From Podarcis erhardii (taxonomy: Eukaryota), in the NCBI GenBank assembly GCA_964252035.1, contig CAXUOO010000178.1: a stretch of DNA of 61,777 nt; one strand, written 5' to 3'. Of the stretch, positions 18,255 through 55,254 are shown one piece after another. A program made the position numbers and the translations under genes. Within the stretch, counting starts at the first letter, position 1. Each line of letters opens with the position of its first letter. Below the pieces are notes generated by a model that ran no database searches, had not been told where the DNA came from, and saw nothing but the letters and a program-made list of their open reading frames with translations.

Positions 18255-21200
18255 ATGAGGCAGTCTTACGCGCTCCGCCGTACAGCAATGAACTCAGCCA
18301 AATGGGATACCAATAGCAACAGCAACACCCCCAGCACCAGTCAAAGCGCGAAACGCAAACACTTTAATGTATTTAGTAGGGTTGGACTCTATGACTGCGC
18401 GTATTTTTCGAAGTATTCATGCGGGTACGCGTGGAATCAAGCGGACACACAGAAGCGGCCACCGCAGCAAAGTCTATTACTGGTTTTCATGGTGCTACTG
18501 GGCATGCTGCTGATGCTGCAATTCAGCGTCTTTGTTGCGCTGCTGACAGGCAGTCTACTGCAGGCTGACGCTAAGTAAGTGATTCTACACAGTAGCTCAA
18601 GCCAAAATGAGCAATAATGAGGTCCCGGGCTATATTTTACCAGCAGCATCGAAAAGCCGCAGGAGTGACATGAAAGACGATCGCAATAACAATGGCAGTA
18701 ACTGCAGCACATTATCACACTTAGCACCCAGTACAAGCGCTTATTTTGCAGAAAAACGAAAAGGGAAAAGCGATCGAAACAGCAAAAGGATTAGCAGTGA
18801 AGATGCCCACAGCAGCAGAAACATCGCTATCAACAACCGCAACACTAATGTAGACTTATGCATCAATCAAACCTTTAGCAACTTTTGCTGCAACTCTTTC
18901 CATTTTGTGAGATATTATGCCACGTTGGTGTTCGTCAAGCAGCTCTATGTACTGTTGCTGCTGATAGGTTGACCACTGTGTTTTCCACGAGATGTGGAAC
19001 TTGGAAGGAAAAGTGTTGACCCAGCACTACAGCTTACAATCTGTTGCTGTTGAGTAGTCACTATATATGCATGAAAAACATAGTAGTCGAGGAAACTGTG
19101 ACGAGAAATTAGCCGTTCTCATTTATCGGTGTGTTTTGTGAGTCTGCACGTTGTCTCAGAAGCACGGGTCCTGCATAGCTTCCGTCTGCTTGTACGTTTG
19201 GCATTATAAGTATCCAGCTGAGTGTTAGGTAAATATACTCAATTCAATTCACAAGACACTTGCCTCAAATTATAACTCATTTGAATGCTTCTCGCTCTGC
19301 GTAATGGAAAATACTATGCTCATACTTTGTACACTAGTCTCTGAAGGAAGTTCTCGTAAGCTTGTTCTGAAAGTCAGGCGTTGATCACATTATTTTTACG
19401 TGTTAGAGAGAGAGTATAACAAAGAGAGAGAGAGTAACAAGAAGCAAGTGTATATACTGCGAATACTTAGAAGGAGCGGGTCATAGGTGCAGCCACATCC
19501 GTTACTACTCAAACATTACGTCTAGCCAGCTTCAGTCCGCTCTGAATCTCTTTGTCGGCTGTTCGAACTTTCAGGCTTTCGCGGCAAGCGGAATTTGGCA
19601 AGCAAACGTCCGCGCTAGCGGATAAGCCAAAGACAGACGTAGCAGTACCGCAGTCAGCGACAGCGGCAGCAGAAGGATCCACTGCGCATACACATTTGTC
19701 AGAAGAAGCTGTAGCAGAGATTTTGCAAGAATCTGTCTTCCCGTATGCGTATTCATGCCTTACAAGCCTAGCAGCCACCATACCTCTCGCGCTCGTAAGG
19801 AAACGCAGCAGCTTCCTACCGTATCCACACGAGACATAAGTACACCATCTACAAGAAGGCAGCCGCGCTGATAGCTGCGAACGCATCAGAAGCAGCAGAA
19901 CGCTCCCCGAAACAGACAGGAGCAGCGCAACATCACTAGCATTCTGCGGTGGCCGCATTGAAATGCAATAAGCATGATGGCAGAAGCAGGTTCTGTACCG
20001 GTAGCCAGAATAGTAGGATCGAATAGCCATAAGAATCCTTTAGCATAGTTTAGAGTGCCTTGCCTGGCTTAGGCGGTAGAACAAATGTGGTTATAATGAT
20101 GAATATTCAGTGGAAAAGAAACAGCGTTTGCTAGCTTCGTGTATTTGCAGATGTAGTGGAAGTATGAATATGAACTTAGTAGACTATTGAAATTTTTCGC
20201 TGCACGAGACTCGGCTAGTGCATGCGCACGCGACCGTGGCGTATTGTCTCCAAAATAATTATGCATATGGACACTATATATATATATATATATATATATA
20301 AGCACATGTGGATACTTGTATATACTTCTGCAGCTGGAAACAATGACAAAAAAATGGTTAGACCGACAGGAAAGAATGCAAAAGCACAGAGGAGTATTGT
20401 GAATCGATTCAATTTGCGTTCACGCATACTCATTCGCTCGATAAAAGATGATGAAGTCATAAAGGCAAAATGATTTTATACACCTGCAGCACATCATCCA
20501 GTTCACTTGCGTCTGGGTATACTATTGTTGCTGCAGATAATTCTGGTCTGTTTCACGTCGTACAGCAGTACATCTGTGAAGGAGAAAACCTCTTCTACTA
20601 CTTTGTTAAGCGTTCGACCACTAGCAGATGGTGCTATCGCCGCCCGAGCGCTACGGTACAGTCGTGGGTGCGGTAGCAGCGAGAGACGGAGCTGGAGCAG
20701 CAGAAGCGACAGGCCGTGCGAAGACGTTTTTTGCCATACAAGACTTAAAAGAAATGAGCAGCAGTCTTTGGAGTCGCCTGCTGCTGTGCAGAAACGCATT
20801 CTGCAAAGGCAGCTTAAAAAGACAACCTCAGTGCCTCTAGCACACCAACCAATGCGGCAACAAGAATACCAGCAGAGACACCAAAACAGCGACAGTAGCA
20901 GCAAACAAAAACACATGACAGCAGCAGCCGATCAGCAAGTACACTTAACGAGCTGCTGGGAGAACATTTCAACAAGTTCTGCTGCCCGACGCACCTTGAG
21001 CAGCTCCAGTAGATTAGGAAACTTGACACGCTTCCGCATGAGCAGGGCGGCAAGGGGTGACAGCAGGCGGCGCCGAAATCGCGCAGCTATTGCAGGGTTA
21101 AAGGCAGAAGCTGGAGAAAAAGCGACTCCAGTGCGAACACTAATGTTCGCGTGTTATCTAGTGGGATTTTGCGTCTCGATCACTTTTTTTGCAGTTGCAA

Positions 21201-24200
21201 GAGTACCTCAAGCCGCGGTAAGCAAACATATATGTGTACAGTTTTCAGTAGCCTACGCTCATTCAAGAAGTATAGAAAACTTTTAGGCATGTTTATATCA
21301 GAATACTTTCTCTCTAGGTATCTGAGCTTTTTCCGTGCTTGACGCAGATTCCTACATATCATTCAGCATCTCTACGCATTCCTTCGCAACTGCTCTAATT
21401 CTTGTGCAGGCTATTTCTGGATTAAAAAACACGCATTTGTCAATTTTTGAAGCTGCTGATATCACGGTTTTTGCTACTATGTTGTACCCCTCTCGCGACT
21501 ACAGTCTCCTTTTTGTCAACTTGCGCGTTGCTTAGACCATGTTTTCCATTAGCCAGACTCAGCACATAACCAAGAATGGCATACAGGACAATACACTGAT
21601 ACATATACATATATATACATATACATATATATATATATGTTTTTAGGTAAGTGCATTGAATATAGGTGAAACTATTTACATAATTTCGTATGTGTATGCA
21701 GAAAGAATGCACATACATGTACATATAACTCAGATATCATACTGAGAAAATTGCAATATGACAGCCTCATATAACTCTGTCGCTACAACATGAATTTGGT
21801 GCGTCAATCTTATACGTCTCTATCTGTTTTTGGTGCGGATTGAGCTGCAGTGTGGAAAAACATGCCCAATACACTGGACAAGTATGCACAGCGCAGCAGA
21901 ATGGCTTTTCTTGTTTTTATTTCTTTTCTGGTGGAGCGGTGCGCTTCTTGCACTGCATCTCTACATTTTAAAACAAAAACACCCGCCAGTATATTATCTG
22001 CGAGGAGTCCTCACGCGCACAAGCCGAGACCATCTCGCACCACAAAACCGGCAGCGACTAACGCCCCAGCACACAACCCGTCAAACGCAGTTTTCCCAGT
22101 CAGAACAACAGCTGGAACGGCACCATCCCCAGCTTCACCAGCAGCAGATGCACCAGAAGCAGGAACAACTTGTGCAAAAGCAGCAGCAAGATCGAAAGGC
22201 TTTAGACGCTCCTCCTGCTTTACCTGTCCCTGCAACGGCTTGCGGAGAAAGCGGCGTCAGTAGAGAGTTGCCTCTATGCTCTGGACTCTGCGACACCAGC
22301 GAAGTATTACGTGCTTTACAGTGTGATAGCAACGACAGCATTAGTGCATTCGACGAGAGTCACACACGCAAGGACTGCAGCAGCGTTGGCAGCTGCAGCA
22401 CTAGGAACAGCTTCAGCTCCACGAGATCCAAATCCGATTGTGTGTCAGATGTTTCAAATGCCTCCCGGCTCTCTAAACGCTCTTTTTCCGAAACAAGTCT
22501 GGACTCATGTGGTTCTCACTCGCGTGGACAGATGCAGAGTCTCAGTTCAGGGTCTCCCTCATTTGGTGCTGCTGTTCATCCAGATCCGCACACTACGCAG
22601 AAACAGCTACTTCACCAAGCACACGTGTTGCCGCTACTTCAGCGCAACTGCAGCAGCACCGCAGGAAGCAGTGAACATTATTATGCGGAGTGCAGCACTG
22701 AGACCACCTGCTGCACCACTAGCAGCAACAGCGAATTTAGTTCGCCTCTGTCTTCGGAAGACCGCAGCCCTGAAGAAAGAAACACCATCGATCTGCAACA
22801 GCTAACACGCGACTCTCCACAAGGTTTTGCCTCTCTAGCGTCTTTTCTGGCAAGAGCAGCAACAGCAGCAGACGAAACACCCACCGGAGCACTATGTGCA
22901 CCTAGTTTGCCAAGCAATTCTTGCGGCCACTCGATAACAACGCAGGCAGCGTCTGCCATATTTGAATCCGAAATTCACACTACAGCAGAGGCTACTGCTT
23001 TGGCAGATGGCAGTTTCGTGGTGCCGCGTACAGAGGAAGCTTCCAGCAGCAGACACGCTAAAGAATCAGAGGCTCCTCGAGCACCATCAAGACCAGTTCG
23101 CCCAAGCGTTGTTATTTGCAATTCTACGGTTTTAAGTGAAGGCCATTGCGTGCAACGAACACCGTGCAATAGAAATTTGCATGCATCCACGCCGCCAAAT
23201 CATCAGGAGTTAAGTGGTGGAAAAACTTTTAGCAACGAGCGTGCCGACAGAGAAAGCAGGCTTATTTAGACCTCCCCCATCAGCTGCACCAACGTGAAGA
23301 GCAGCAGACTCAACTACAGGTATCTTATACGCAGTCTAACCAGAAGGAAAGTTCTCCTTCTCTGCATCAACAGCAACAAGAACCTCCGTTCGCTAACCGA
23401 CAGCTGCAGCCAGTACCGATATTGCAGCTATCCCCTGCCGACTATCAGAAACAGCTCCAGCAGCGGCTTCATGAGTTGTCCCAGCAGCGTTTGCATCAAC
23501 TGGATGAGGCCCATTTACAGGAATCACGGCACCATTCACTTCAGCAGCAACTGCATACAGGATTCACTGCAGGAGAAAAGAGAGTCGGGACAGGACTAGC
23601 ACAACAAGATTGCGGGAAAGATGCTGGATTGCTGCAGGTGTTGTGGCCGCTTGCTGGCGAGCAGCAGGCAACGTTGCTGCAGCGAGTTTTTGGTAGAAGA
23701 ACACCAAAATTGGCTGCTGTACTCCCACGGAAAAGAACTTCCACTCTGGGGAAGCTTTATCACATAAGAGGAGTTTACTCGCGTCGACAGTCTACACCGG
23801 ACTCGTTCAGACATGATGCAGCTACTTTCGGCAATTTGCTTCAGCAGCAGCACCAGCTGCATGCGCCGCTTCCTGTCGTGAGAGGGCGCCAATCACGTCA
23901 TAGTCTCAAGGAAAGCATGTAAATTGCAGCAGCCGCCCCGCTGTGTGCTTTGTTTTTTTAAAGCTGCGGTGAAGAATACCTCGTTTGTGTTGTGGCAGAA
24001 ACAACTGCTAATAATGTTGTGTCTCATCGCCACACATTTGGGGAGAGTCAAAAACGCTGGCAAAAAAGCGCATAGGCAGCTTAGCAGAGCACTTGAATCG
24101 ACAAAGTGAGATGTTCGATCAGCCGTATGAGTGATAATACGTGATGGGTGAAGTCTTATAGCAAACCATCACAGGCACTATAAGCAGAGCCAGCGGCAGG

Positions 24201-24457
24201 ACAATTAGAGCTTGTCCAGCTGCAACGGCAGCAGCAGCGATGTCAAAGACGAAGCCGTTAAGCAGACAATATATGCGCAGTCGGTGTGCGGCGCAGCTGG
24301 ACGGCTTGCCCAGGTAGAAGCGTCACCATTGTACGCGCAGCAACAGGAGAACGCGAATATTCACGTTGCATGTAACCATATATCCTAAGAATTACCCCCA
24401 CCTGGGCACTTCCAGAGGCGCACCTTCACCCAGCTGCAAACGTGGAACAAATCATGA
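18255..24457 (+). pseudogene. Copy A of the multi-pass membrane protein gene, disrupted (+1 frameshift and premature TAA)
   Basis: Exons 18255-18574, 19575-19794, 19940-20000, 20490-21217, (optional 21410-21526), 21851-23918 and 24220-24457 use the same splice sites and phases as copy B. A5 at 23221-23225 versus A4 in copy B truncates the frame at 23269. TAA at 24386-24388 aligns with GAA in copy B. The A-run could be a sequencing error. Confidence 0.7.
20275..20300. repeat. (TA)n microsatellite, intronic in copy A and absent at the matching position in copy B
   Basis: Read directly from the sequence. Confidence 0.95.
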
Positions 24458-32700: not shown

Positions 32701-33928
32701 ATCCCCACATAAGCACGCATACACAGCATGATGCAGATGTTATGCATCTATACGTACATATATATATATATACATATATATATGCGTAAGTATATGAGTA
32801 TGTAGCCTATGTTGGCTGACAGACAACTTGTTCATCTATATATATGTGAGACCCTACATTAAGATGATTTACGAGTAGTCTTCGCAATTACATGAATGTA
32901 AACAAAATGACGTATCAAGGACACAGACTGCACCGCAGATGCCTTTGGATCCCCACAACTCCATACTTAGTCATTTTGACTGGTACGAAACTATGTGCAA
33001 GTATACACATTTTTCAAGGATACATATTTTTCTGAGTTTATGTCGTTTTTACATTCTGTACGAAAAGGAAACGCAGCATATACTCAAATTTGCATCGAGG
33101 CCTGTAGTGCAATGGTATGGCGAGTTCGTTGGCAAGTAGAGTGTGGCATGCGAGAAAATAGCCAATATCAGAACAGTCTTATAAGGCCACAACTGTTTGG
33201 AGCAGCACATGCAGCATAGGAGGAAGCGCACAGGCTCTTAGCGACTGCAGCAGTAACAGCGGCCAAACACCACCGAGCCACTCGTGCAACAGCAGCATGA
33301 ATGACGAGTGCCGCAGAACAAAGGGCACGAGCAGGAGCAGGTTGCAAATGTTAACGGCTGATAGTCAGCTTTAGAAGTTCTAAAATGGAAAAGCTACAAC
33401 CCATATATATTGTGCTTTCCTCTTGAAGTGACCCATCTGAAGCGCTAGTAGCAAAGGTGAAGGACTGTAGCATAGCTATAATACAAAAAAGTTGACTTTG
33501 GGATAATCAGTGCACACCATAGCCGCAAAATGACTTAGAGAATAGCTAACAGCATCACGTAGGAGATGGGTTGTTTCTTCGAAAAGATTTCACACACATA
33601 AGCGACAGCAACAGCAGTTAGAGCGCAACATCGTAAACCTACACCCTTAAGTAAAAGGATTGCAAAGCACACATCGTGAGACAGAAAAAGAAGCCGCACG
33701 AGCAGTAGGGCTTGAGTCGAAACACTTGTTACAGCAGACAACAGGCGCAACAGCAACACAGTGTTTGAGATTGCCTGCATTGTCGCACAAACGGGCATAA
33801 AGCAGTCCTTGGCTTCACTTACCGATATAAAATCGACAAAATGTGTCTACCGAACAAGATGATTGAAGCTTTGAATTAGCAGCAGAATAAGTGGTAACTG
33901 TGACGTAGACCACAAGATTTTCAAATAG

Positions 33929-34139
33929 GATAAAGCTTTCAAATTAGCCGCAGAACCAATGGTAACACTGTCATACACACAAAAAGCTATCTGAAAATGT
34001 TCTCTAACCTTAAAATGCAAATTTAGCATAGTTAAAAATGATAAAGCTCTGAAACTAGCCGCAGAACCAGTGGTTACACTGGCATACACAAAAAGCTATT
34101 TACAAATGTTTTCTAACCTCAAAATACGAATTCAGCACA
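33929..34139. repeat. Imperfect tandem repeat, period 111 bp x2 (copy B only)
   Basis: gataaagct...tagccgcagaacca.tggt.acactg.catacac...aaaagctat at 33929 and 34040. Confidence 0.9.
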
Positions 34140-38693: not shown

Positions 38694-41600
38694 ATGAGGC
38701 AGCAACATTACACGTCTCACTGTTCAAGAATAAGAACAGCTTCAGCTAAAGTGGACACCAGTAGCATCAGCAGCCCTCGCAGCCCGGGTGAAACCTCAAC
38801 ACGCGACAGAAGAGTTGGGGCAAGCAGCAGTTGTAGGGGAAAAGCTTTTCAGCGCTCGAGAGAGCAGCCGCCTCCTTTTGCTGCTGCAGAGCGGCCACGT
38901 ATCAATAACAAAATACCCAGCGAACGTAATAGCGTTGGCACCAGGGGCTTCTCTTTCGTTTCAAAGTATTTATGCGGTTACGCATGGAATCAGGCAGAGA
39001 CGCAGATGCGGCCGCCCCAGCAGAGACTTTTATTGGTTTTCGTGGTGCTACTGGGCATGCTGCTAGTGCTGCAATTCAGCGTGTTCATTGTGCTGCTGAC
39101 AGGCAGTCTACTGCAGGCTGACGCTACGTGAGTGACTCTGTACAGTAGCCTAAATCATTCTGAGCAATAGTAGTGACGAGGGTTATGGTTTTTACCAGCA
39201 GCGTCGGTATGCCACAGAAGCGACATGAAAGACGATCGCAATAGCAGCGGCAGCAATTCTAGCACGTCAAAACACCCAACGCCCACTACAAGCGCTCATT
39301 CTGCAGTAAACACGACAAACGGAAAAAGCACTCTGAATAGATGATGATTGATGTAGATGTCCGCAGCAGCAGCAGCAGCATCGTGACCAAAAGCCGCGAC
39401 ACGAGTGTAGACCCGTCCATCAGATCTAACCATCAGCACCTATCGTTGCAGCTCCTTCGTTAGTGTGAGACTTCATTTTGTGTTGGTGTTCTTCGCGCAG
39501 CTATATGTACTGTTGCTGTTGGTTGGTCAACAACGGCTTTCACCACGAGAAGTGGAACTTAGAATGAAAGGAGTCAACCCACCACTATCGCTTACGACAT
39601 GCTGCTGTTAAGTAGTCACTACATATGCATAAAAAACAAAAACAAAAAAACAGAGTATTCGTGCAAACTGTGACGGAAAATTGGCTGACCTCGCTTATGC
39701 GTGAGTTTTAGAATTATCTACGTCATCTTGTACGTTTGGCGATTAAACTATATTGTTGAGTTTTAGATCATAATAATCCACTCCATTTACAAAAACTTGC
39801 CTCTTATCACAATTCATTTGCGTGCGTCTCGTCTTGCATAATTGAAAATTATCATGCTCCTACTTCGTACACTGTTCTGTGAAGACAGTTTTCGTAGATT
39901 TGCTCTAAAAGTCAGGTGTCGATAACATGAGAGGAAGAAATTTACTACGTTTTTTTCGTATTGAAGAGAGAATGAAAAAAAGCAAGTACATATATTGCAA
40001 ACAGGCACATCCGCTTCTACGCAAACATCACATCTAGCCAGCTTCAGTACTCTGAATTTCGTTGTTGGCTGTCTGAATATTCAGGCTTTCGCGGCAAGCA
40101 GCATTTGACGAGCAAACGTCCGCGAGAGTGGATAAGGCAAAGACAGAAACAGCAGTACCCCAGCCAGCGACAGCGGCAGCAGAAGGATCGACTGCTCATC
40201 CACATTTGTCAGACCAAGTTGTAGCAAAGGTTATGCAAGAAGCTGTCTTTCCCTATGCGTATTCATGCCTTATAAGCCTTGCAGCCACCATACCTCTCGC
40301 GCTCGTAAGAAAACGCTGCAGCATCCTATATTCCGAAGCAACCGTATTCGTTGGGACGCGAGCACAGAGTACACCATCTACAACAAGCCTGCCGCGCTGA
40401 TAGCTGCAAAAAGATCAGAAGCAGCAAAGCGGCAGTGCCCAAAACAGACAAGCGCAGCACAACAATTCTAGCATTCTGCAGAAGCCGCACTAAAGCGCGA
40501 TAAGCATGATGGCAGAGACAGGAGAAGCTGTCTCGGTAGTCAGTATAGCAGGATCGAATAGCCGTACCACTCCTTTTGTGTAGTCCAGAGTGGCGTGCCT
40601 AGCTCAGGAGGGATAACATATGTGGATCTGATGATGTTTCCCTCAGTGGCTTAGAAAAGCGTTTGTTAACTTTTTAGATTTGCATATGTAATGGACGTAC
40701 GAGCATTGTCAAAGTAATCTACTCAAATTTGTCGATATATGTGCAACCGCGAGCGTCGCTTATCGTCGCCGAAATGAACATACACATATAGCTACTAGTA
40801 TATACATCTGCAGCTCGACACAATGACAACAAAATAGATAAGACAGGAAACAATGCAGGAGAACAGAAGAGTATTGTGAACCAATCTAATTTGCGTACAC
40901 GCATACGCATTCGCTCGGTAAGAAGATGATGAAGTCATAAAGGCAAAATGATTTTATACACCTGCAGCACATCAACCAGTTCACTTGCGTCTGGGTATAC
41001 TATTGTTGCTGCAGATAATTCTGGTCTGTTTCACGTCGTATAGCAGTACATCTGTGAAGGAGAAAACCTCTTCTACTACTTCGTTAAGCGTTCGACCACT
41101 AGCAGATGGTGCTATCGCCGCCCGAGCGCAACGGTACAGTCGTGGGTGCGGTAGCAGCGAGAGACGGAACTGGAGCAGCAGAAGCGACAGGCCGTGCGAA
41201 GACGTTTGTTGCCATAAAAGGCTTAAAAGAGATGAGCAGCAGTCTTTGGAGTCGCCTGCTGCTGTGCAGAAACGCATTCTGCAAAGCCAGTTTAAAAAGA
41301 CAACCTCAGTGCCTCTAGCACACCAACCAATGCGGCAACAAGAATACCAGCAGAGACACCAAAACAGCGACAGTAGCAGCAAACAAAAACACATGACAGC
41401 AGCAGCCGATCAGCAAGTACACTTAACGAGCTGCTGGGAGAACATTTCAACAAGTTCTGCTGCCCGACGCACCTTGAGCAGCTCCAGTAGATTAGGAAAC
41501 TTGACACGCTTCCGCATGAGCAGGGCGGCAAGGGGTGACAGCAGGCGGCGCCGAAATCGCGCAGCTATTGCAGGGTTAAAGGCAGAAGCTGGAGAAAAAG

Positions 41601-44600
41601 CGACTCCAGTGCGAACACTAATGTTCGCGTGTTATCTAGTGGGATTTTGCGTCTCGATCACTTTTTTTGCAGCTGCAAGAGTACCTCAAACCGCGGTAAG
41701 CAAACATATATGTGTACAGTTTTCAGTAGCCTACGCTCATTCAAGAAGTATAGAAAACTTTTAGGCATGTTTATATCAGAATACTTTCTCTCTAGGTATT
41801 TGAGCTTTTTCCGTGCTTGACGCAGATTCCTACATATCAGTCAGCATCTCTACGCATTCCTTCGCAACTGCTCTAGTTCTTGTGCAGGCTATATCTGGAT
41901 TAAAAAACACGCATTTGTCAATTTTTGAAGCTGCTGCTATCACGGTTTTTGCTACTATGTTGTACCCCTCTCGCGACTACAGTCTCCTTTTTGTCAACTT
42001 GCGCGTAGCTTAAACCATGTTTTCCATTAGCCAGACTCAGCACATAACCAAGAATGGCATACAGGACAATACACTGATACATATACATATATATACATAT
42101 ACATATATATATATATGTTTTTAGGTAAGTGCATTGAATATAGGTGAAACTATTTACATAATTTCGTATGTGTATGCAGAAAGAATGCACATACATGTAC
42201 ATATAACTCAGATATCATACTGAGAAAATTGCAATATGACAGCCTCATATAACTCTGTCGCTACAACATGAATTTGGTGCGTCATTCTTATACGTCTCTA
42301 TCTGTTTTTGGTGCGGATTGAGCTGCAGTGTGGAAAAACATGCCCAATACACTGGACAAGTATGCACAGCGCAGCAGAATGGCTTTTCTTGTTTTTATTT
42401 CTTTTTTGGTGGAGCGGCGCGTTTTTTGCACTGCATCTCTACATTTTAAGACGAAAACACCCGCCAATATATGATTTGCGAGGAGTCCTCACGCGCACAT
42501 GCCGAGACCATCTCGCACCACAAAACCGGCAGCGACTAGCGCCCCAGCACATAACCCGTCAAACGCAGTTTTTCCAGTCAGAACAACAGCTGGAACGGCA
42601 CCATCCCCAGCTTCACCAGCAGCAGATGCACCAGAAGCAGGAACAACTTGTGCAAAAGCAGCAGCAAGACCGAAAGGCTTTAGGCGCTCCTCCTGCTTTA
42701 CCTGTCCCTGCAACGGCTTGCGGAGAAAGCGGCGTCAGTAGAGAGTTGCCTCTATGCTCTGGACTCTGCGACACCAGCGAAGTATTACGTGCTTTACAGT
42801 GTGATAGCAACGACAGCATTAGTGCATTCGACGAGAGTCACACACGCAAGGACTGCAGCAGCGTCGGCAGCTGCAGCACTAAAAACAGCATCGGCTGCAC
42901 GAGATCCAAATCCGATTGTGTGTCAGATGTTTCAAATGCCTCCCGGCTCTCTAAACGCTCTTTTTCCGAAACAAGTCTGGACTCATGTGGTTCTCATTCG
43001 CGTGGACAGGTGCAGAACCTCAGATCAGGGTCTCCCTCATTTGGTGCTGCTGTTCATCCAGATCCGCACACTACGCAGAAACAGCTACTTCACCAAGCAC
43101 ACGTGTTGCCGCTACTTCAGCGCAACTGCAGCAGCACCGCAGGAAGCAGTGAACATTATTATGCGGAGTGCAGCACTGAGACCACCTGCTGCACCACTAG
43201 CAGCAACAGCGAATTTAGTTCGCCTCTGTCTTCGGAAGACCGCAGCCCTGAAGAAAGAAACACCATCGATCTGCAACAGCTAACACGCGACTCTCCACAA
43301 GGTTTTGCCTCTCTAGCGTCTTTTCTGGCAAGAGCAGCAACAGCAGCAGACGAAACACCCACCGGAGCACTATGTGCACCTAGTTTGCCAAGCAATTCTT
43401 GCGGCCACTCGATAACAACGCAGGCAGCGTCTGCCATATTTGAATCCGAAATTCACACTACAGCAGAGGCTACTGCTTTGGCAGATGGCAGTTTCGTGGT
43501 GCCGCGTACAGAGGAAGCTTCCAGCAGCAGACACGCTAAAGAATCAGAGGCTCCTCGAGCACCATCAGGACCAGTTCGCCCAAGCGTTGTTATTTGCAAT
43601 TCGACGGTTTTAAGTGAAGGCCATTGCGTGCAACGAACACCGTGCAATAGAAATTTGCATGCATCCACGCCGCCAAATCATCAGGAGTTAAGTGGTGGAA
43701 AACTTTTAGCAACGAGCGTGCCGACAGAGAAAGCAGGCTTATTTAGACCTCCCCATCAGCTGCACCAACGTGAAGAGCAGCAGACTCAACTACAGGTATC
43801 TTATACGCAGTCTAACCAGAAGGAAAGTTCTCCTTCTCTGCATCAACAGCAACAAGAACCTCCGTTCGCTAACCGACAGCTGCAGCCAGTACCGATATTG
43901 CCGCTATCCCCTGCCGACTATCAGAAACAGCTCCAGCAGCGGCTTCATGAGTTGTCCCAGCAGCGTTTGCATCAACTGGATGAGGCCCATTTACAGGAAT
44001 CACGGCACCATTCACTTCAGCAGCAACTGCATACAGGATTCACTGCAGGAGAAAAGAGAGTCGGGACAGGACTAGCACAACAAGATTGCGGGAAAGATGC
44101 TGGATTGCTGCAGGTGCTGTGGCCAGTTGCTGGCGAGCAGCAGGCAACGTTGCTGCAGCGAGTTTTTGATAGAGGAACATCGAAGTTTGCTGCTGTACTC
44201 CCACGGAAAAGAACTTCCACTCTGGGGAAGCTTTATCACGTGAGTGGAGTTTACTCGCGTCGACAGTCTACACCGGACTCGTTCAGACATGATGCAGCTA
44301 CTTTCGGCAATTTGCTTCAGCAGCAGCACCAGCTGCATGCGCCGCTTCCTGTCGTGAGAGGGCGCCAATCACGTCATAGTCTCAAGGAAAGCATGTAAAT
44401 TGCAGCAGCCGCCCCGCTGTGTGCTTTGTTTTTCTAAAGCTGCGGTGAAGAATACCTCGTTTGTGCTGTGGCAGAAACAACTGCAAAGGTATATTTGCAG
44501 CTGCTAATAATGTTTTGTCTCATCGCCACACATTTGGAGAGAGTCAAAAACGCTGGCAAAGAAGCGCATAGGCAGCTTAGCAGAGCACTTGAACCGCTAA

Positions 44601-44953
44601 AGTGAGATGTTCGATCAGCTGTATGAGTAATAATAAGTGATGGGTGAAGTCTTATAGCGAACCACCACTAGCACCAAAAGCAGAGCCAGCGGCAGGACAA
44701 TTAGAGCTTGTCCAGCTGCAACGGCAGCAGCAGCGATGTCAAAGACGAAGCCGTTAAGCAGACAATATATGCGCAGTCGGTGTGCGGCGCAGCTGGGTGG
44801 TTTGCCAAGGTAGAAGCTTCATCATTGTACGCGCAGCAACAGGAGAACGCGAACATTCACGTTGCATGTGGCCATGTAACCGAAGAATTACCCCCACCTG
44901 GGCACTTCCAGAGGCGCACCTTCACCCAGCTGCAAACGTGGAACAAATCATGA
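38694..44953 (+). CDS. Unrecognised multi-pass membrane protein (~1249 aa, ~5 predicted TM helices, long Q/S/C-rich C-terminal region); intact copy B
   Basis: Exons 38694-39127 (MRQ...TM1, AC|GTGAGT), 40085-40304 (..IPLAL|GTAAGA), 40472-40535 (ttctag|CAT...G|GTAGTC), 40968-41695 (TM3, TM4, GCG|GTAAGC), 42329-44394 (CGKTCPIHW..TM5..AT|GTAAAT) and 44716-44953 sum to 3750 nt with all phases compatible. Splice sites are conserved in copy A, and exon 1 shows mostly synonymous or conservative substitutions between copies. The 3' end and optional exon 41888-42004 are uncertain. Confidence 0.78.
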
Positions 44954-46020
44954 CTCGTGAACAGAGAGAAAAAATTGAAGAGAACGTGTACTACCTGAAA
45001 ACAGCGTAGTATCCTGCTTAGGATCGACATGCTCTCGTGCCGGTCAAAATGTGAAACAGATAACGGCTGAGAAATCCAGATTTTACTGATATTTCAATGA
45101 TTCAGCAGTTCAAGAAGACAAACAGTGCACTGTATTGTTGATAGGCTTTGGTGCTCTCAAATGGTGACGTAAATGTTGAAGGTGGCTACGCAGAACGACA
45201 CGTCAATCAAAGCCAGGCTGCTTTTTGACCGGCAATTTTTTAAGCGATATTGCTAGCCTGACAGCAAGACGAAGCGGAACAGAAGCCGTGATCCGTCAAT
45301 TTCAAAAGTTTGATGCTTTTGCCTCTTAGTGCATAAGATGCAAAAGCCGCAGAAATTGTAAAGCGCAAAAGCCCACACTGGTCAATGTTTCTTAGCTTGG
45401 AATCTATACGTGTAGAGGCTTTTCCAGTGCTGGTCAAATATACATATACAAGTATACTCATTTTTAATATAAGGCAATGATATCAGAATGTGTACCAGTT
45501 TGATATGACAGCGGAATAAGGTCTTGCGTTTCGATAGAGGCTTTGTTCCAAACTGTTACGCACTCTGCAAGAGCGAGATTTTTCTCTTAGCCATTTTCCT
45601 CTCGCTTATATCGCTTATTCCGTAAGGACACCCTCAGTCCTATACGTGCACTGTACCGTTGCTTAAATAAACAGCGTCGTAAAAGAGCAAATTGCATTTG
45701 CCGCTGTAAAGGTATAAATCAGTTCAATATATATTAGGCGAGCGCCACGTAACTTTATTAATGTAGTTGCTGCTGCTCAGCGCGTCAGCAATATCCAAAT
45801 GGTTTTTTTAACTGTCTAGTACCGTACAGAGAAGCAAGAGAATCGTTTATGCGTTTAAGGTGGTGTTAATCCGCATGCCTTTCGCTGTAGTTCTTGATAG
45901 AGTTGCACTAGGTATTGCTGCGTTCGAAACAAAAATCGTCCCTCACCGGAAAAAGCTGCAACAGCTCATGTGTTGCACGCACATTAAGAGAATGTCAATT
46001 GTCTTATGTGGTTCAAGGAT

Positions 46021-46530: not shown

Positions 46531-47071
46531 GCACTTTTTTTAAATTTTTGGCGTATAAGGACAGCGCAGCCTCTGATTCAGAGCCACTGACTTGCTGGGG
46601 CGATAAGCTCGGTTTTTCATCCAGACATTTGTAGAGTACAATATACAGCCTTAATTCTACAAGTATTACCGGTGAAGCTCTGAGATGTGACATATGCTGA
46701 GGTTTTTTGGTACATAGGGAAGAAAGCAGTTTGAGAGCGAATATGTCACTTTGTTATCCACGCCCTCTACCAGGACAAAAACATTCAAAAGTGAGAAACT
46801 GCTTGTAACATTCAGATTGTGGGACAGCAGAGCAGTGCGCTGTCAAAAGTGCTTGAACAAGTAGAGTAGCACGGATGAATAGGATGCACAGGCGACGGAA
46901 ACCTAAAGAAATATGGCGGAATCATTAGTGGCGATTGGCAAACAAACAGAGAGAGACACGAAATATACGCTACACATATGTACATAGCTATTTTGTATGC
47001 ATGTAAATATGGAATTTTCTGGTTATGTACGCTTGCAAAATACATATAAAGATATATCAATCCCTTATTCA

Positions 47072-47239
47072 CGTGTATAGCTTCTGTAGATCTCATCAAT
47101 GTAAATACCAGTGTGCACATCAATAGGTGTCTTCGTAAAACGGGGGCGCAGCTCGCGTGTATAGCTTTAGTAGATCTGCTCAATGTAACTACCAATATGC
47201 ACATTTGAAGGCGCTTTGGTAAAACGGGGGCGTGTTGCG
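47072..47239. repeat. Tandem repeat, period 84 bp x2
   Basis: cgtgtatagctt..gtagatct..tcaatgtaa.tacca...tgcacat...gtaaaacgggggcg at 47072 and 47156. Confidence 0.9.
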
Positions 47240-49029: not shown

Positions 49030-52007
49030 ACTAATTACACGTATATTGAATGAATGTAATATCTAATCGTGCTTAACAACATTTATACATATATCAATAT
49101 ATGATACAGTATACGCGGTAATTCGCTACTTCACAGTTTGCAACGGAAAGATTTACTACTCATCTATTTGACGGAAATTCATGCTAAGAGTTGAACGCTT
49201 GAATGCACTCAGTTTGCTCCCATCATGTACAAAACGAGCAGCAGTTATAAATACGTAGCGCTGATATCCTTATTCTTTACCTGCTTATGCCGATGTACAC
49301 TAGTAAAATCCGGGTTCAAACTCAGAAATAAATAGTGAAAGGCAAGCCTGCTGCTTTGTGCCCACTGCTTTGAAGGTCATTCCTCGAGTCTTTGCATTAC
49401 AAAAACTACAGATATCGAATGTGCATGGACTGGTGTTAGTATAATAAAAGAAACGCGACTACGTTCAGGAATCTCCATGCCGCAGATGCATCTTCGTGGT
49501 TCTCTCGTCTGACTGACCAAAAAGTTACAAAGAACCCTCATCCAGTTGATTGTGACGTAGCTGATGCACGTTGCGAATGCAGCTGCACACATGCACACTT
49601 CGATTTATAATCCTATAGCCTTCACATCAACAGCATCCCCGGAAGGTGCGGTATGTGTAATTTCACGTTCGCTTTATTTTGTTCCACTTCCGCCGTCAAG
49701 CAACACATATTTCTTAACATAGGGCTGATGAGTGCCAGCGAGAGAGTCACTTGCTCTTGTCGCAGCTTTCCGGCAGGCTGTGCTATCACTTCTCCACTAT
49801 CTGTAGCTTTCGATACAAAGTCTCGATGGAAACTTTGAATTTGCTATATTGCAGTTGAAGCGCTTGACATGGTGAAATATTTGACGCTAGACTTCTGAAT
49901 TTTCGCTGTTAGACCTCGTCCAATTGGCCCTTCGGCACCGTTTCCTGCAGCGTCTACGCCGTTGACAAAAATCTGGCTTGTAGAGAGCATTTATGTGAGC
50001 TAGAGTAAACTACGACATTCACGCAACGGAACTGCTAAGGTGGGGGAGTTTCCACGGTGCAAACCTAGAGATGAAGCACGAGTGCTTGAAGTTAGCCACC
50101 AGCTACATATGCTGAGATTGTTTTTGCTACCACGCTGAGTGTTACGCATGTTAGACGTCACATTCTTGCGTTGTTTCTTTGTGGCTGGTATTGCTAGCAG
50201 GCGATGAATTTCCATTCGAATCTGCTAATAAAAAGTTTTTTGGGGGCGTCAGCTTCACCTTTAAAATGCCTTTTTAAAACGCTCTTGCACTGCCGGCAGC
50301 AGCAGCAGCAGCAGGGACGATTGGCAGCTTACGCACGGCAGGAGGTGCTGCAGTCGGAGTTAAAACTGCTTCAACGTTATACTCAAACAAGTCTCTCAAA
50401 AAAGAACGGCTCGCAAACAACGGCGAGAGAAGAAAAGTGTGGAAAACTTTTATTAGTGTTGGACGCAAGAGTCCGTGCATAACATACAGATTTAACGTAT
50501 GTCCTTATTATGTATAGCTCCTATCAGCAGTAGGAAACAACTTGTTCACGCATCAAATTTCAGAAGCTAAAGAGAACTGACAGAGTTGCCCAGACAATTG
50601 TGTGGACGTTCTTGACGTGAAACGAGTCCCCTACTTTATATATTGCAAGATAAATTATCGATCGATATGTGATTCGGCGAGAATCCATATGCTGCGTACA
50701 GAAGCGGTGGAGCGAATTTCTCACATTAACGATTTCTTACTTATCGACATGATACACAGAGGCAACTCATTAGAGTACAACGTTGTATTACACCACTGCA
50801 ACAATAAATTCTTCCCTTTTCATTTAGCGCGAAAGAAAAGGAAGTCATTACTGGTCTACAGTATCAAGTATTGACTTGTGAAGTACGCAGAGCTGACTGC
50901 ATAAAGACAACGTATGGTAAGCTATATTATGTTCTACAAGTTCGTACACTAAGCTACCAGTACGACCGTGGCACACCACGCAAAATAATGTCTGTTGTCG
51001 CACCCTCGTCAGGAAAAAAAACTCCATATAAACGATAGTCACTGCATTGATAGTAGTAGGCGTAGGCTTTTTTTGCATTACAAGTAAAGGGAGTGACTGC
51101 ATCCACTTAGCGAAACAGCAGAGATAGTGGCAGCGCTACACAAAAGAGAAGTTGGAAAAAAAAAGCAAGTTGCGAAACGACTACGCTTACATGTCTAAAT
51201 CTTCTGCTTGCTATGCTTCTGACAATGTACACTATACCTGGATCGATATTTATAATGCTCTATTGATAGATCAATAAAATATAAAAACTTACACACCGGA
51301 ATATATTTGTATATTATCGGAACTAGTATATATGAAACGTGACGTTACGATCCTCCATCCATATAGAGATGCACCATTGTTAAATAAATCTGTACTTGAT
51401 GGCAGTGATGTCGCACACACAGACTTTCAAACTTGGCAGGACTTACGGACCTGGATGCAAGATAACACATACACTTCAGATTCGCGGATTCTTTTAATCT
51501 TGCATGTTCATTACCTTTACTCCTTCATAGTGGCCACCATCGCTAAGCAGGATTGAGGAACAATGTATTTTCCTGCAGCTAAGCGCAGTCGATCTCAAAG
51601 AGATACTGCCTTTTATAACAAGACAAGTATAGTTTTCTACAAATAATTTGAGTTGCTGCCCTCCAGTTGCGGGCAAGCGGGATTAGCAACAGCACCTGCA
51701 CTAATGACCCTACTGGCATAAGTCTACGTGAGCAGCGACAGCGACGGGAGCGCATGCCACGCCCGCACAAACACCCATACAATTGTGGCACCAGGTAAAA
51801 TGTTACGGCATAGCTTTTGTACACTCTCCAGGTGTATATCCTTTTTGTGTAACAAAACTGAAAAACTAGCGGGCAGCTCTGCTGTAATAGGAGCCGGTCG
51901 CCACGTTCCGCTGTGCCTCCATCATGAGGCGATGTATGTGTACATTATATTCGCACTATTCTGTTGCTTTTTTTCGGATTTCGCTTCCTTTCTTTTACTT
52001 TAACTTC

Positions 52008-53554
52008 ATGCCCCTTCCAATACCATTGTTGCCAATCATTGCTTTTTCTGCCAAAGATGTCACCATACAGCAGACTTTGACGCCGAAAACAAATGGCTCA
52101 GCTCGAGGATTGCTGCGCCATGGGATCCTTTTTTTTTTCTGGTTGGTCGCGCTTCACAGCTCATACACAGCTTTCAGTAAACGCGATTGGCAGCACGGCA
52201 CTGTCAGGGCTACTGCTGTTGCAGATGCATCTGCAGGAGGGCGCCGCAATGATTCGGCAACACGTCCACGGCATCGTCTGCAGCGACTGGAGAGCTTAGC
52301 AAGTAGTGACAGTTCCTCTCTGATACGCTTGGACGACGTGAATTACGCTTCTCTAGTGCTAAGGTCTCTTCCGCAGGCGTCATCGGTTGAACAACAAGAG
52401 CAGCACCGAATACAACGGAGCAATAGTAAATTCAATTTTTACAGCAAACAAGGGCCGGCTCGGCCCTATCATCTCTTTATTCTGTACACGCTCGGTGAGA
52501 GAGCGCCGCAGTACGCCTCTTGCCTCGAATGCAGCGACGCCCTCAACGCTTATCAAAAAGTCTCAGAAGCTTTTCGCAGAGCAGGTACTCATATTGCTTT
52601 CGTGCGTTTACGCACATGCTTACATATTCCGGATTTGGATAGATATGTTCCCAAAGGGTTTCCTAACAATCACCACACTTCTTCCCTAGTGAAATTGGAC
52701 TGAAAACTAGATGATATGCGCAGATTGCAGTATACATCTGTACGCATGTGTCAGTAAGATATATATACGTACCGTTACCAACGTAACTGCACAACGCAGC
52801 AGCAGCGTTCTGGTTGTGCTTTCACTTGTTTATTCCATTATTTTTACATCGGAAGCGGACGGATAAGACTTTTGTTGTGGTCGCATTGAGCTTTCGTCCA
52901 TGTGCCAGTCCAACATAAGTTTCTACTACGTAGTCGTATTTGTAAGTATTAACTTACACACGTGAGGACGCAGGCAATTGGAGTACTGAGATATCTGGTT
53001 TTGTTGAAAACTTTATCAGTTATATCCTTTATACATATATATATATATATATCTGTATTCGTGGCTGCCATTCTGAGAATAAATTTGTATGTATGTGCGC
53101 AACGGCATCTAAATGAATCCGTGAGCTAACATGCTGTGTTTCAATTTCAGGCGCCCACAAGCAGCGTTCTTCCCGAGATTTGAAAAATGAAGGTGCTCCG
53201 CTTTCCTACTGTGCCCGAAGTCCCGTGTTTTTCGCAGTTGTGGATGTTGCTGCGCTTAATCATACACCTGCACTGCATGGCCTTCCATCTTTGCCTGCTG
53301 TGGTCCATTTGCCACCTGCGTTGCCGCATCAACTCCAGCAAGAAGTTAGTGAAGAGGAAGAAGAGATTGCAACGGACGAAGAGTTGCCTTACGTTGCATC
53401 GAGAGTTGAAAAAGCGGATTCTTGGAGTACGATGGTCAAGAATGCTCCATTGCCATATCCCAAAGAAGAGCTGCTGTTACTTCAGAGGGCGCTTAACGAC
53501 GCTGGCGTCGAGCGTACGATTTTGGAATGGGCCAACATGAAAACATTAAGGTAC

Positions 53555-53595
<41 letters not shown>

Positions 53596-55254
53596 CTGAT
53601 AATTGATAGCAGCTGTATGGTCTGCGCGAAGAAGTTGTTTGACTGAAAATAAATTTTTCAGTGAACTGTGCTGTAGCTCTCAGAGCATGCTTGATTTGTT
53701 CCCCGCTTTCTTAGAGATAGTCTCACGGAGTGACAGATTTGATCTAAGATAGCCATAAGACCTGCTACACAGTTCAGTCCCTTCTTCTAGATCCATTGTA
53801 CATATATCGGTGGATAAGAGGGCATTAACGTCTAAATGATGCGACTCTGTTTCTGTTTAGTGCTCGTTAGTCTGTATAAAAAAAAGAGTTTTTATCGTAT
53901 GCAGTGAGTCAAGGTCGGTTTAGTTTTAGTAAATGCTGTAGTTCAGACATATCAAACAATATATCGTTTCGGTTTGTTCTTGCGTACATTTTGAAAGCAA
54001 GAACATGTTTTATTAGCGAAATTTGCTGCTACGTTTGCATGTAAATAGCGCTCACGAAGATTGTTTCTCCGTCGGCGCTATTACGGAGTGCCTGCTGCTG
54101 AGGAATAATTTCTAAGAGGAACGAGTTTTAGCATAGCCAACCACAATAATGCTCTACCGCAGCATAGTGTCTACGATGAACTCTGTTGACGCTTTCACTG
54201 GCAAACTCATTACTTTTCTATGCGATTTTGCAGGAGAGTGAAGGTGCCGACCTCCGCTTTGATGGATGCTTCTTCTCTATGCATTTTGCTATCTTTGCTT
54301 GTCGTGCTGGTGCTACTGGCGAGCGCTGCGCTGTCGCTGGTGCCGCGCTATCCGTGGTTGATGCCATTGGGCGGTTGCACCTTTTACTGGTTAAGCACGA
54401 GTGGCTTAGTCTTTTCATTATACAATCGCGTCCCACTTGTTGGCTACGAGAACATTTCGCGCCAATTGGTACTCATTTCTCGCTCTATGAGATCGCAGTT
54501 TCTTCTCGAAGGATTTCTCATGAGTGCGTGTTGTATCGTTGTAAGTTTAGCGGCTGCAGTGCTGATCATTCTGCCAGACGCGTTTCTTCGTACGTGGCTA
54601 GCGTGTCAGAGGAAAAAGAAATTCCCATCTAATCAGGCGTTGTTGAAGCGCTTGTATCTCACTCACAGCGTTAGCGGCAGCTCTAGTGGGCATGTTTCCT
54701 CAAGTGTCTCTGATTTTACCCATATATTATCCGAGGATGGGATCCTTCGCCTCAGAAAATTTGACGACGGTGTGGTGTCGGTGACTGCGCCGATATATAT
54801 GGAGAAGAGGCAAAAGTTTGATGTGCAGGACACAACGCACAGCGATACCGTGGTCAGAAGCGCAGAATGTATGCCACACAGTGAGAGTGCACATCTTTCA
54901 AATAAGAACGGCATTCACAGTAGAAGATCGTGCGTCGATCCGCGCAGATCACATCGAGCTTTACATGAGTTTGTGCCGCTACAGTTGGAACAGGCAATAG
55001 AAGAAAAGAAAGCCCTCCTGCAGTGGGTCCAAAATGAGAAGCAGGAAAACGCGGAAGCAGGCTTTGTTGCTTTTCTCGGGGCGCGCCTTTGTCTTCTTCT
55101 CTGTCTCATGCTCGCTGCTTTCCTCTCGACAGCGTAGAATTGTGCTCTCATAATGTTTCCCTAGCTTAAATCTCCTTGGTACAATGCGACTTTTTTTCCT
55201 CCATCATCGTATATGACTGGACCAATACGCGTAGATCGTGGAAATACATTATAG
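52008..55254 (+). CDS. OST3: Oligosaccharyltransferase OST3/OST6 (TUSC3/MAGT1-like) subunit: signal/TM, thioredoxin-like domain with CxxC, 4 TM helices
   Basis: Exons 52008-52584 (RPYHLFILYT...SCLECSDALNAYQKVSEAFRRA G|GT), 53151-53550 (FFAVVDV...LPAVVHLPP...ILEWAN..AG|GT) and 54234-~55134 (WLSTSGLVFSLYNRVPLVG, QFLLEGFLMS, TM3, TM4) are phase-compatible. A tail LKSPWYNATFFPPSSYMTGPIRVDRGNTL* lies at 55165-55254. These motifs are typical of the OST3/OST6 family. The junction to the tail is unresolved (see findings). Confidence 0.88.
53562..53594. repeat. (AT)n microsatellite just inside OST3 intron 2
   Basis: Read directly from the sequence. Confidence 0.95.

What the first reader, a model, noticed from the sequence alone, without database searches (positions are those of the whole stretch)
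38694..44953. Unrecognised ~1250-aa multi-pass membrane protein family, best candidate for a novel system
Seen: a six- to seven-exon model with TM1 (LLLVFVVLLGMLLVLQFSVFIVLL), TM2 (FPYAYSCLISLAATIPLALHSA), TM3 (LRLGILLLLQIILVCF), TM4 (TLMFACYLVGFCVSITFFAAA) and a Cys-containing loop (CGKTCPIHWTS). TM5 (WLFLFLFLFWWSGAFFALHLYIL) is followed by ~730 aa of Q/S/C-rich tail. In the exon 1 core I counted 14 synonymous versus 10 mostly conservative changes between copies, including the conserved CGYAWNQA motif. Inference: a receptor- or transporter-like protein with large loops and a signalling tail. The C-P-I-H-W loop before TM5 loosely recalls GPCR ECL2, but no family can be assigned. Together with duplication, conversion and truncation of one copy, it looks like an evolving receptor/decoy pair.
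Basis: partly seen in the sequence, partly recalled or inferred. Interest (0 to 1): 0.72.

Follow-up and report, generated by a model that had tools for sequence, protein, structure and literature searches.

The report
Orphan coccidian membrane protein, duplicated
A parasite contig assembled along with a lizard genome carries two tandem copies of a real, spliced gene for a membrane-anchored, mostly disordered protein with no detectable relatives; nothing points to a receptor, a transporter or a decoy pair, so it is an ordinary lineage-specific gene.

Summary
The sequence features are real. Every quoted peptide is at the stated place. A 5- or 6-exon model (about 1170 or 1248 aa) reads through with no internal stop. 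All its splice sites are kept in the paralogue 20.5 kb upstream. The open run of 708 codons far exceeds chance (maximum 329 in 500 resamples). The exon-1 core around CGYAWNQ and TM1 is under purifying selection (14 synonymous : 9 non-synonymous, dN/dS 0.17, p = 9e-5).

No relatives were found. A full HMMER pass of the 696-aa exon over 1.84 billion proteins gave 0 hits. Word searches of three exons, Pfam, NCBIfam, PDB, the ESM Atlas and two metagenome scans were also blank.

Four hydrophobic helices are strong and the fifth (TM2) is marginal. AlphaFold models most of the two largest exons as disordered. The linker and tail evolve at about the neutral rate.

The "truncated copy" is probably an assembly error. 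Its two frameshifts are +1 insertions in A5 and C5 runs. A short-read contig carrying all 36 copy-A variants lacks both.

No RNA data were available, so the exon joins are inferred.

Verdict: a lineage-specific membrane-anchored disordered protein, tandemly duplicated and partly homogenised by gene conversion. The receptor/transporter/decoy reading is unsupported. Earlier scan notes on other pieces had already identified this genome as a lizard-borne coccidian.

The parts
38694..39127 (+). Exon 1 coding part. The ATG is conserved in both copies. A variable S/R/P-rich N-terminus is followed by the conserved CGYAWNQ motif and TM1. Donor is TAC|GTGAGT, phase 2.
   Evidence: Both copies stay open from the shared ATG to the shared donor although copy B is 38 codons longer, so the indels come in multiples of three. 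The core 38958-39125 has dN/dS 0.17, Fisher p = 9e-5.
39027..39098 (+). TM1 (LLLVFVVLLGMLLVLQFSVFIVLL), the strongest hydrophobic segment and the likely signal-anchor
   Evidence: Kyte-Doolittle peak 2.89
40085..40304 (+). Exon 2. An A/T/E-rich stretch followed by the marginal hydrophobic segment 'TM2' (40242-40298). Acceptor TTCAG|G, donor CTC|GTAAGA, phase 0.
   Evidence: dN/dS is 0.90 overall. The TM2 part has 3 synonymous changes to 1 non-synonymous. Kyte-Doolittle peak is only 1.53.
40472..40529 (+). Small charged exon (HSAEAALKRDKHDGRDRRS). An alternative donor lies at 40535. This exon is needed to bring exon 2 (phase 0) into frame with the next exon (phase 1).
   Evidence: Enumeration. 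The AG acceptor, the GT donor and a length of 1 modulo 3 are all kept in copy A. The donors are weak (GTCTCG / GTAGTC), so this is the least certain exon.
40968..41695 (+). Exon 4. Contains TM3 (40979-41035), a ~195-aa S/R/Q-rich linker and TM4 (41618-41674). Acceptor CCTGCAG|, donor GCG|GTAAGC, phase 0.
   Evidence: The AlphaFold model has helices at residues 2-32 and 212-237 plus an R-rich helix at 175-210. 156 of 264 residues have pLDDT below 50.
42329..44398 (+). Exon 5. Contains the Cys loop CGKTCPIHWTS (42329-42361), TM5 (42380-42448) and a ~650-aa Q/S/L/A-rich tail. TAA stop at 44396-98. A possible donor CAT|GTAAAT lies at 44394/5.
   Evidence: In the AlphaFold model the TM5 helix has pLDDT about 90. 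Helices lie at 82-124 and 535-587. 542 of 696 residues have pLDDT below 50.
44716..44953 (+). It may instead be 3' untranslated region.
   Evidence: The frame is consistent with the donor at 44394. Copy A has an in-frame stop here and dN/dS is 0.73.
18255..24457 (+). Paralogue copy A, with the same exon structure. All start and splice signals are conserved.
23221..23274 (+). Two +1 insertions in homopolymer runs of copy A (A5 at 23221, C5 at 23274). They break the tail ORF in the assembly.
   Evidence: Both are absent from the short-read contig X1 record 6. That contig is 2073 nt long and carries exactly the 36 copy-A variants and the 20-nt deletion.
40926..45500 (.). Recently homogenised tract, 94-100% identical to 20448-25000, with blocks at 100%. 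It sits inside an older duplication that is 60-87% identical further 5'.
   Evidence: Identity profile; blastn

Best explanation
The locus is a real, spliced, taxonomically restricted gene of a coccidian parasite whose DNA was assembled together with a wall-lizard genome.

The protein is about 1170-1250 aa. It has four firm hydrophobic helices and one marginal one, and most of its two largest exons (about 950 of the residues) is modelled as disordered. A basic N-terminal arm of about 110 aa leads into a very hydrophobic signal-anchor (TM1). TM1 is preceded by the only clearly constrained motif, CGYAWNQ. TM3 and TM4 are separated by a disordered loop of about 195 aa. TM4 and TM5 form a hairpin around a short loop that holds a Cys-x3-Cys motif. 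A Q/S-rich tail of about 650 aa follows a basic RRKH stop-transfer signal, so the tail is most likely cytosolic. It holds two long Q-rich helices that could pair as coiled coils.

The likely mode of action is inferred, not shown: a membrane-anchored scaffold or spacer of the secretory pathway or pellicle. Its function would depend on anchoring, length and bulk composition rather than on a folded catalytic, ligand-binding or pore domain.

The gene sits in an old tandem duplication (exon-1 dS about 0.44). The 3' two-thirds of the two copies has recently been homogenised by gene conversion. Both copies are probably intact.
For: Gene reality:
- The open run of 708 codons compares with a maximum of 329 in resamples.
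- The GT/AG model is phase-consistent with no internal stops, and every signal is conserved in the paralogue.
- Exon-1 indels between the copies come in multiples of three.
- The exon-1 core is under purifying selection: dN/dS 0.17, p = 9e-5.
- In a related parasite from another host species, exon 1 differs at 2 of 270 positions, against 60 of 1063 in the tail.

Architecture:
- AlphaFold models show helices only at the TM segments and at two or three amphipathic or Q-rich stretches, with 156/264 and 542/696 residues below pLDDT 50.

Weak constraint on linker and tail.

Orphan status:
- 0 hits at E <= 1e-3 among 1.84e9 representative proteins for the 696-aa exon.
- Blank word searches for three exons.
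- Blank Pfam and NCBIfam, PDB and metagenome scans. Atlas scores of 0.76-0.89 are below the 0.9 lead level.

Duplication and conversion.

Copy A intact.

Eukaryotic parasite context: an intron-split OST3/OST6 gene lies at 51.9-55.1 kb, and earlier notes s1-263147 and s1-254774 describe the genome.
Against: - No RNA run holds the locus, so no junction, start or end is verified.
- The small exon has weak donors.
- Only the 696-aa exon received the exhaustive HMMER search. Exons 1-4 were searched only with the length-limited word index, Pfam and one Atlas look-up, so a distant relative of the membrane core could have been missed.
- The joined protein was neither searched nor folded, so a helix bundle formed across exons cannot be judged.
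- The topology is ambiguous. With five TMs and a cytosolic N-terminus the tail would be lumenal, which conflicts with the RRKH signal. With four TMs the highly basic small exon would be lumenal.
- Near-neutral evolution of two-thirds of the protein also fits decay or diversifying selection.
Confidence: 0.6

Rival explanations
1. A fast-evolving host-interaction or surface/secreted antigen family. The two paralogues are kept similar by gene conversion. The loops and tail are under diversifying selection, and only the membrane anchor is conserved.
For: dN/dS is about 1 or higher in the linker (2 synonymous: 11 non-synonymous between copies). Against the related strain the count is 22 non-synonymous: 6 synonymous. 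The tail diverges as fast as intron sequence while the ORF stays open. Tandem duplication with conversion is typical of parasite contingency families.
Against: The counts cannot be told from neutrality (p = 0.41 and p = 1.0). Only part of the strain differences was listed. There is no signal peptide at the N-terminus. The tail follows a basic stop-transfer signal that predicts a cytosolic location. Only two copies are seen.
Confidence: 0.15
2. The model merges more than one gene, or includes non-coding pieces. For example, exons 1-3 could form a short separate transcript, with the 259-aa and 696-aa ORFs forming another gene.
For: There is no RNA support. The link between exon 2 and the 259-aa ORF depends on a 58-64-nt exon with weak donors. 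Exon 2 has dN/dS 0.90. The 5' exons lie in the old, diverged part of the duplication and the 3' exons lie in the converted part.
Against: All phases close without any stop in both copies. The 259-aa ORF has no in-frame ATG upstream of TM3 and starts right after a good acceptor. No other coding conservation or rival ORF was found on either strand of the duplicated unit.
Confidence: 0.15
3. One reading: a receptor- or transporter-like multi-pass protein with a signalling tail, present as a functional receptor plus a truncated decoy.
For: Several hydrophobic helices and a Cys-containing loop before TM5. Copy A is broken in the assembly.
Against: No 7TM or transporter profile hit. There are only 4-5 helices, separated by long disordered loops. 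The tail is unconstrained. The copy-A frameshifts are homopolymer insertions that are absent from the short-read contig of that copy.
Confidence: 0.04
4. A decaying or very young locus: ORFs that are open by recent origin and Q-codon-rich composition, not a maintained protein.
For: Neutral-like substitution in the linker and tail. No relatives anywhere. No expression data.
Against: A 708-codon open run cannot arise from composition alone. There is purifying selection and in-frame indels in exon 1 across a duplication with dS about 0.44. Splice signals are kept in both copies.
Confidence: 0.06

Closest known systems
Taxonomically restricted 'hypothetical' membrane proteins of Apicomplexa with long low-complexity or disordered regions, for example the many unassigned transmembrane proteins of Toxoplasma and Eimeria and the homopolymeric-amino-acid-rich proteins of Eimeria (my own knowledge, not tested here)
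   Same: A few hydrophobic helices embedded in Q/S/A-rich disordered sequence. No Pfam domain. A multi-exon coccidian gene. Rapid sequence turnover.
   Different: No sequence similarity to any of them was detected. Whether a positional orthologue exists in sequenced coccidia could not be tested.
FAM174-like membrane proteins (Pfam DUF1180, PF06679)
   Same: An N-terminal low-complexity region followed by one TM helix. Exon 1 gives a weak match (E = 0.04, 14.8 bits).
   Different: The score is far below the curated cut-off of 27.7 bits. The match is driven by low complexity plus a TM helix. FAM174 proteins are small and single-pass.
G-protein-coupled receptors
   Same: A cysteine-bearing loop ahead of a TM helix.
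   Different: There are not seven helices. No 7TM profile hit was found. Loops of 50-200 disordered residues lie between the helices.

Membership tests
GPCR / 7TM receptors | Seven closely packed transmembrane helices recognised by a 7TM profile | tested here: not met
   Four strong hydrophobic segments and one marginal one. No Pfam 7tm family at E <= 1 for any exon.
GPCR / 7TM receptors | Conserved disulphide between the TM3 top and ECL2 | not testable with these tools
   Only a CGKTC string lies before TM5. There are no homologues or reliable fold to place it.
Membrane transporters or channels (MFS, ABC, SLC, ion channels) | A recognisable transporter or pore domain (profile hit, or a compact bundle of six or more helices) | tested here: not met
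   Pfam and NCBIfam are blank. PDB sequence search is blank. The helices are separated by disordered loops. The fold of the joined protein was not attempted.
FAM174-like (DUF1180, PF06679) | Score at or above the Pfam gathering threshold (27.7 bits) | tested here: not met
   14.8 bits, E = 0.04, exon 1 only
Receptor/decoy paralogue pair | One copy truly truncated | tested here: not met
   The copy-A frameshifts are +1 insertions in A5 and C5 runs. They are absent from a 2073-nt short-read contig that carries all 36 copy-A variants. Exons 1-4 of copy A are intact.
Transposable element or repeat-borne ORF | Transposase, RT or integrase domain, terminal repeats, many copies | tested here: not met
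   No such Pfam hit. There are two tandem copies only, with no terminal repeats around the unit. The high-depth loose ends are short CAG/CAA-rich stretches.

The most novel reading that the evidence does not exclude
The two paralogues could be a previously unseen coccidian family of membrane-anchored host-interaction or antigen proteins. Their exposed disordered regions would evolve under diversifying selection while gene conversion keeps the tandem copies in step. That would be a small contingency locus in a lizard-borne coccidian carried by several host species.
Probability: 0.12. Interest if true: 0.45.

Novelty: new member of a known kind. Interest (0 to 1): 0.25.

Why it matters
It is a membrane anchor plus disordered, fast-evolving sequence, with no sign of a new molecular machine.

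The useful by-products are modest:
- a phase-checked gene model for an unannotated lizard coccidian;
- a clear case of old paralogues partly homogenised by gene conversion;
- a warning that homopolymer indels in this assembly can fake pseudogenes;
- evidence that near-identical parasites occur in sequencing runs filed under three organism labels in four studies.

If the protein later proves to be surface-exposed or secreted, the pattern of a conserved anchor with free-running loops would make it a candidate strain marker or antigen.

Tried and rejected
- Word-index protein searches of the 696-aa, 176-aa and 259-aa ORFs found nothing. The first was swamped by Q-rich words: 8000 candidates were scored.
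- The exhaustive HMMER search of the 696-aa ORF gave 0 hits.
- Pfam at E <= 1 gave only sub-threshold DUF1180 and DUF2116 matches on exon 1, rejected as low-complexity/TM noise. NCBIfam was blank. PDB gave one E = 0.58 chance hit.
- The ESM Atlas by features gave best scores of 0.89 and 0.76, below the lead level.
- Two metagenome scans with CGYAWNQ, CPIHWTSM and similar patterns gave pattern matches but no relatives.
- Sequencing runs gave DNA contigs only, with no RNA and no splice joints. The two listed joints lie at CAG/CAA-rich low-complexity spots with sides of 20-21 letters and were disregarded.
- A mini-exon ending at the good donor at 40917 was rejected. It has an in-frame TAA at 40887-89 and no AG after it (my reading).
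- tblastx of the upstream halves of the duplicated unit (12.0-18.4 kb against 32.5-38.9 kb) found no coding conservation, so there are no extra upstream exons or a second gene there.
- Tandem-repeat and Rfam scans of the locus found only an intronic (TA)n-like array.
- No fold search was run. Both models are mostly below pLDDT 50, so any match would be meaningless.
- Two paper searches for the host-parasite assembly found nothing relevant.
- The spliced (joined) protein was not searched or folded. The join was used inside a script only to count length and stops.
Full report
**What the window is.** The window is eukaryotic and intron-rich, with 40-50% GC. It carries an intron-split OST3/OST6 gene at 51.9-55.1 kb. 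Earlier notes on other pieces of the same assembly describe a coccidian parasite co-assembled with a wall lizard (s1-263147, s1-254774; s1-254775 calls it Eimeria-like). I did not test the taxonomy further. It fits what I saw.

**Check of the observation.**
- The region is one of two tandem copies. Copy A lies at about 13.5-25.6 kb and copy B at about 34.1-46.3 kb, with a 7.2-kb core alignable at 87.7%.
- Identity is mosaic. It is 60-87% in the 5' part, with gap-free blocks of 83-87% exactly over exon 1 and exon 2. It is 94-100% from 40926 to about 45500. This is an old duplication whose 3' two-thirds was recently homogenised, in agreement with the sibling note s1-259115.
- The upstream halves of the duplicated unit show no coding conservation on either strand. 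The unit therefore holds this one gene.

**Gene model**.
- Exon 1 runs from the ATG at 38694 to 39127 (donor GTGAGT, phase 2).
- Exon 2 is 40085-40304 (donor GTAAGA, phase 0).
- A small charged exon is 40472-40529, or to 40535. It is needed to reach phase 1. Its AG, GT and length class are kept in copy A, but its donors are weak.
- Exon 4 is 40968-41695 (donor GTAAGC, phase 0).
- Exon 5 is 42329-44398, ending in TAA.
- Optionally, a GTAAAT donor at 44394/5 joins to 44716-44953.
- The 5-exon form is 1169-1171 aa and the 6-exon form is 1247-1249 aa, with no internal stop. Every start and splice signal is present in copy A.
- I joined exons only inside a script, to count length and stops. All searches were done exon by exon, by reference.

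**Is it more than chance, and is it coding?**
- The longest stop-free run in the locus is 708 codons. In 500 first-order Markov resamples the mean was about 145 and the maximum 250-329.
- In exon 1 both copies remain open from the shared ATG to the shared donor although copy B is 38 codons longer, so the indels come in threes.
- The 56-codon core (SKY.CGYAWNQ...TM1...TGSLLQADA) has 14 synonymous and 9 non-synonymous differences. That gives dS 0.44 and dN/dS 0.17, with Fisher p = 9e-5.
- In exon 2 the overall dN/dS is 0.90. The hydrophobic end has 3 synonymous changes to 1 non-synonymous.
- The TM3-TM4 exon and the tail exon give 15.5 synonymous to 38.5 non-synonymous differences between the copies. 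That is dN/dS about 0.75 and not different from neutral (p = 0.41).

**Evidence from sequencing runs**.
- No RNA run holds the locus. All four runs laid were DNA contigs, so no splice junction could be verified.
- Runs from a second host organism (X3, X4, a different study) hold a close relative of the parasite. Its exon 1 differs at 2 of 270 (X3) and 2 of 151 (X4) positions. A stretch spanning the end of exon 2, the intron, the small exon and more intron differs at 22 of 512 positions plus 10 gap letters. The tail differs at 60 of 1063.
- Of the 28 listed X3 differences that fall in the linker and tail, 22 are non-synonymous and 6 synonymous. That is the neutral expectation. Only a subset of the differences was printed, and X3 may mix the two paralogues, so this is indicative only.

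**The "truncated copy".**
- In the assembly, copy A's tail ORF is broken by two +1 insertions, both in homopolymer runs: A5 against A4 at 23221 and C5 against C4 at 23274.
- The short-read contig X1 record 6 spans 42501-44593 on copy B. It has 36 other letters and 20 gap letters and is 2073 nt long.
- The copy A to copy B alignment over the same span has exactly 36 mismatches, the 20-nt deletion and the two single-base insertions.
- The contig is therefore copy A throughout, but without the two insertions. The simplest reading is a consensus error in the long-read assembly, so copy A is probably intact.
- Mixing of graph paths, or heterogeneity in the parasite population, cannot be fully excluded.
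- Exons 1-4 of copy A are intact in any case. The receptor/decoy idea loses its basis.

**Architecture.**
- Kyte-Doolittle 19-residue peaks are TM1 2.89, TM3 2.18, TM4 2.15 and TM5 1.95. 'TM2' reaches 1.53 and is marginal.
- Single-sequence AlphaFold models are low in confidence and are used only for secondary structure and disorder.
- The TM3-TM4 exon has helices at residues 2-32, 175-210 (R-rich) and 212-237, with 156 of 264 residues below pLDDT 50.
- The 696-aa exon has the TM5 helix at pLDDT about 90. It has Q-rich helices at 82-124 (pLDDT 70-80) and 535-587 (pLDDT 74-89). 542 of 696 residues are below pLDDT 50.
- There are no tandem repeats in the coding sequence and no Rfam match.
- The charges flanking the helices suggest that the TM3-TM4 linker and the tail are cytosolic (RRRRNR before TM4, RRKH after TM5). 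The TM4-TM5 loop with Cys-x3-Cys would then be lumenal or external. This favours four true TM helices with a cytosolic N-terminus.
- The very basic small exon argues the other way, so the topology is unresolved.

**Relatives.** None were found.
- Full HMMER of the 696-aa exon against 1.84e9 representative proteins gave 0 hits at E <= 1e-3.
- Word-index searches of the 696-, 176- and 259-aa ORFs were blank. Those see only proteins of 0.55-1.75 times the query length.
- Pfam gave only sub-threshold noise (DUF1180, 14.8 bits against a cut-off of 27.7).
- NCBIfam, PDB and two metagenome scans were blank. The Atlas gave 0.89 and 0.76, below the lead level.
- The membrane-core exons did not get the exhaustive search, because the cap is one job. 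A very distant relative of that part cannot be excluded.

**Interpretation.**
- The best-supported reading (about 0.6) is a lineage-specific coccidian gene for a membrane-anchored protein that is modelled as largely disordered.
- Selection is visible on the reading frame, the splice signals and the motif-plus-TM1 core. It is not visible on the amino-acid sequence of the loops and tail.
- That pattern fits a protein whose role depends on anchoring, length and composition, such as a scaffold or spacer. The two Q-rich helices are possible pairing elements. This mechanism is inferred, not shown.

**Novelty and score.** A protein family with no detectable relatives is formally new. However, orphan low-complexity membrane proteins are commonplace in Apicomplexa (my own knowledge), and nothing here indicates a new kind of system. 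I file it as a new member of a known kind, with interest 0.25.

Noticed in passing
window 23221 and 23274 (copy A): Single-base insertions in A5 and C5 runs break an ORF in the assembly. They are absent from a short-read contig of the same paralogue. Homopolymer consensus errors in this assembly may create false pseudogenes elsewhere too.
   Followed up: yes
window 51924-55137 (+): An intron-split OST3/OST6-family gene (an oligosaccharyltransferase subunit or magnesium-transporter-like protein). Pfam PF04756 scores 41.3 bits on ORF 54220-55137 and gives a weaker piece on ORF 51924-52703.
   Followed up: partly
window 38700-44699, runs X2-X4 and X6-X8: DNA runs filed under two other organism labels (B and C) and three other studies hold parts of the stretch. 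X3 and X4, the two I laid, match at about 94-99%. The parasite or a close relative therefore seems widespread in these host samples. Its tail differs more from copy B (5.6%) than copy A does (about 1.4%), as expected if gene conversion acted after the lineages split.
   Followed up: partly
window 13486-13546, 33855-33915, 33923-33983, 34034-34094: A 61-nt repeat lies once at the upstream edge of copy A and three times at the upstream edge of copy B. It may mark the duplication junction.
   Followed up: no
window 12-1136 and 1572-3845 (+): Two long ORFs of 374 and 757 aa have no Pfam family, apart from a sub-threshold chance hit on the first. They may be exons of another unassigned coccidian gene.
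   Followed up: no
window 47069-47232: Two adjacent 80-nt direct repeats at 80% identity, just downstream of the duplicated unit.
   Followed up: no
window 39361-39380, 41346-41387, 42650, 43329-43350: Short CAG/CAA-rich stretches attract many partly matching contigs from elsewhere, at depths up to 126. They produced two spurious 'joints' in the read table. This is low-complexity cross-mapping, not splicing.
   Followed up: partly
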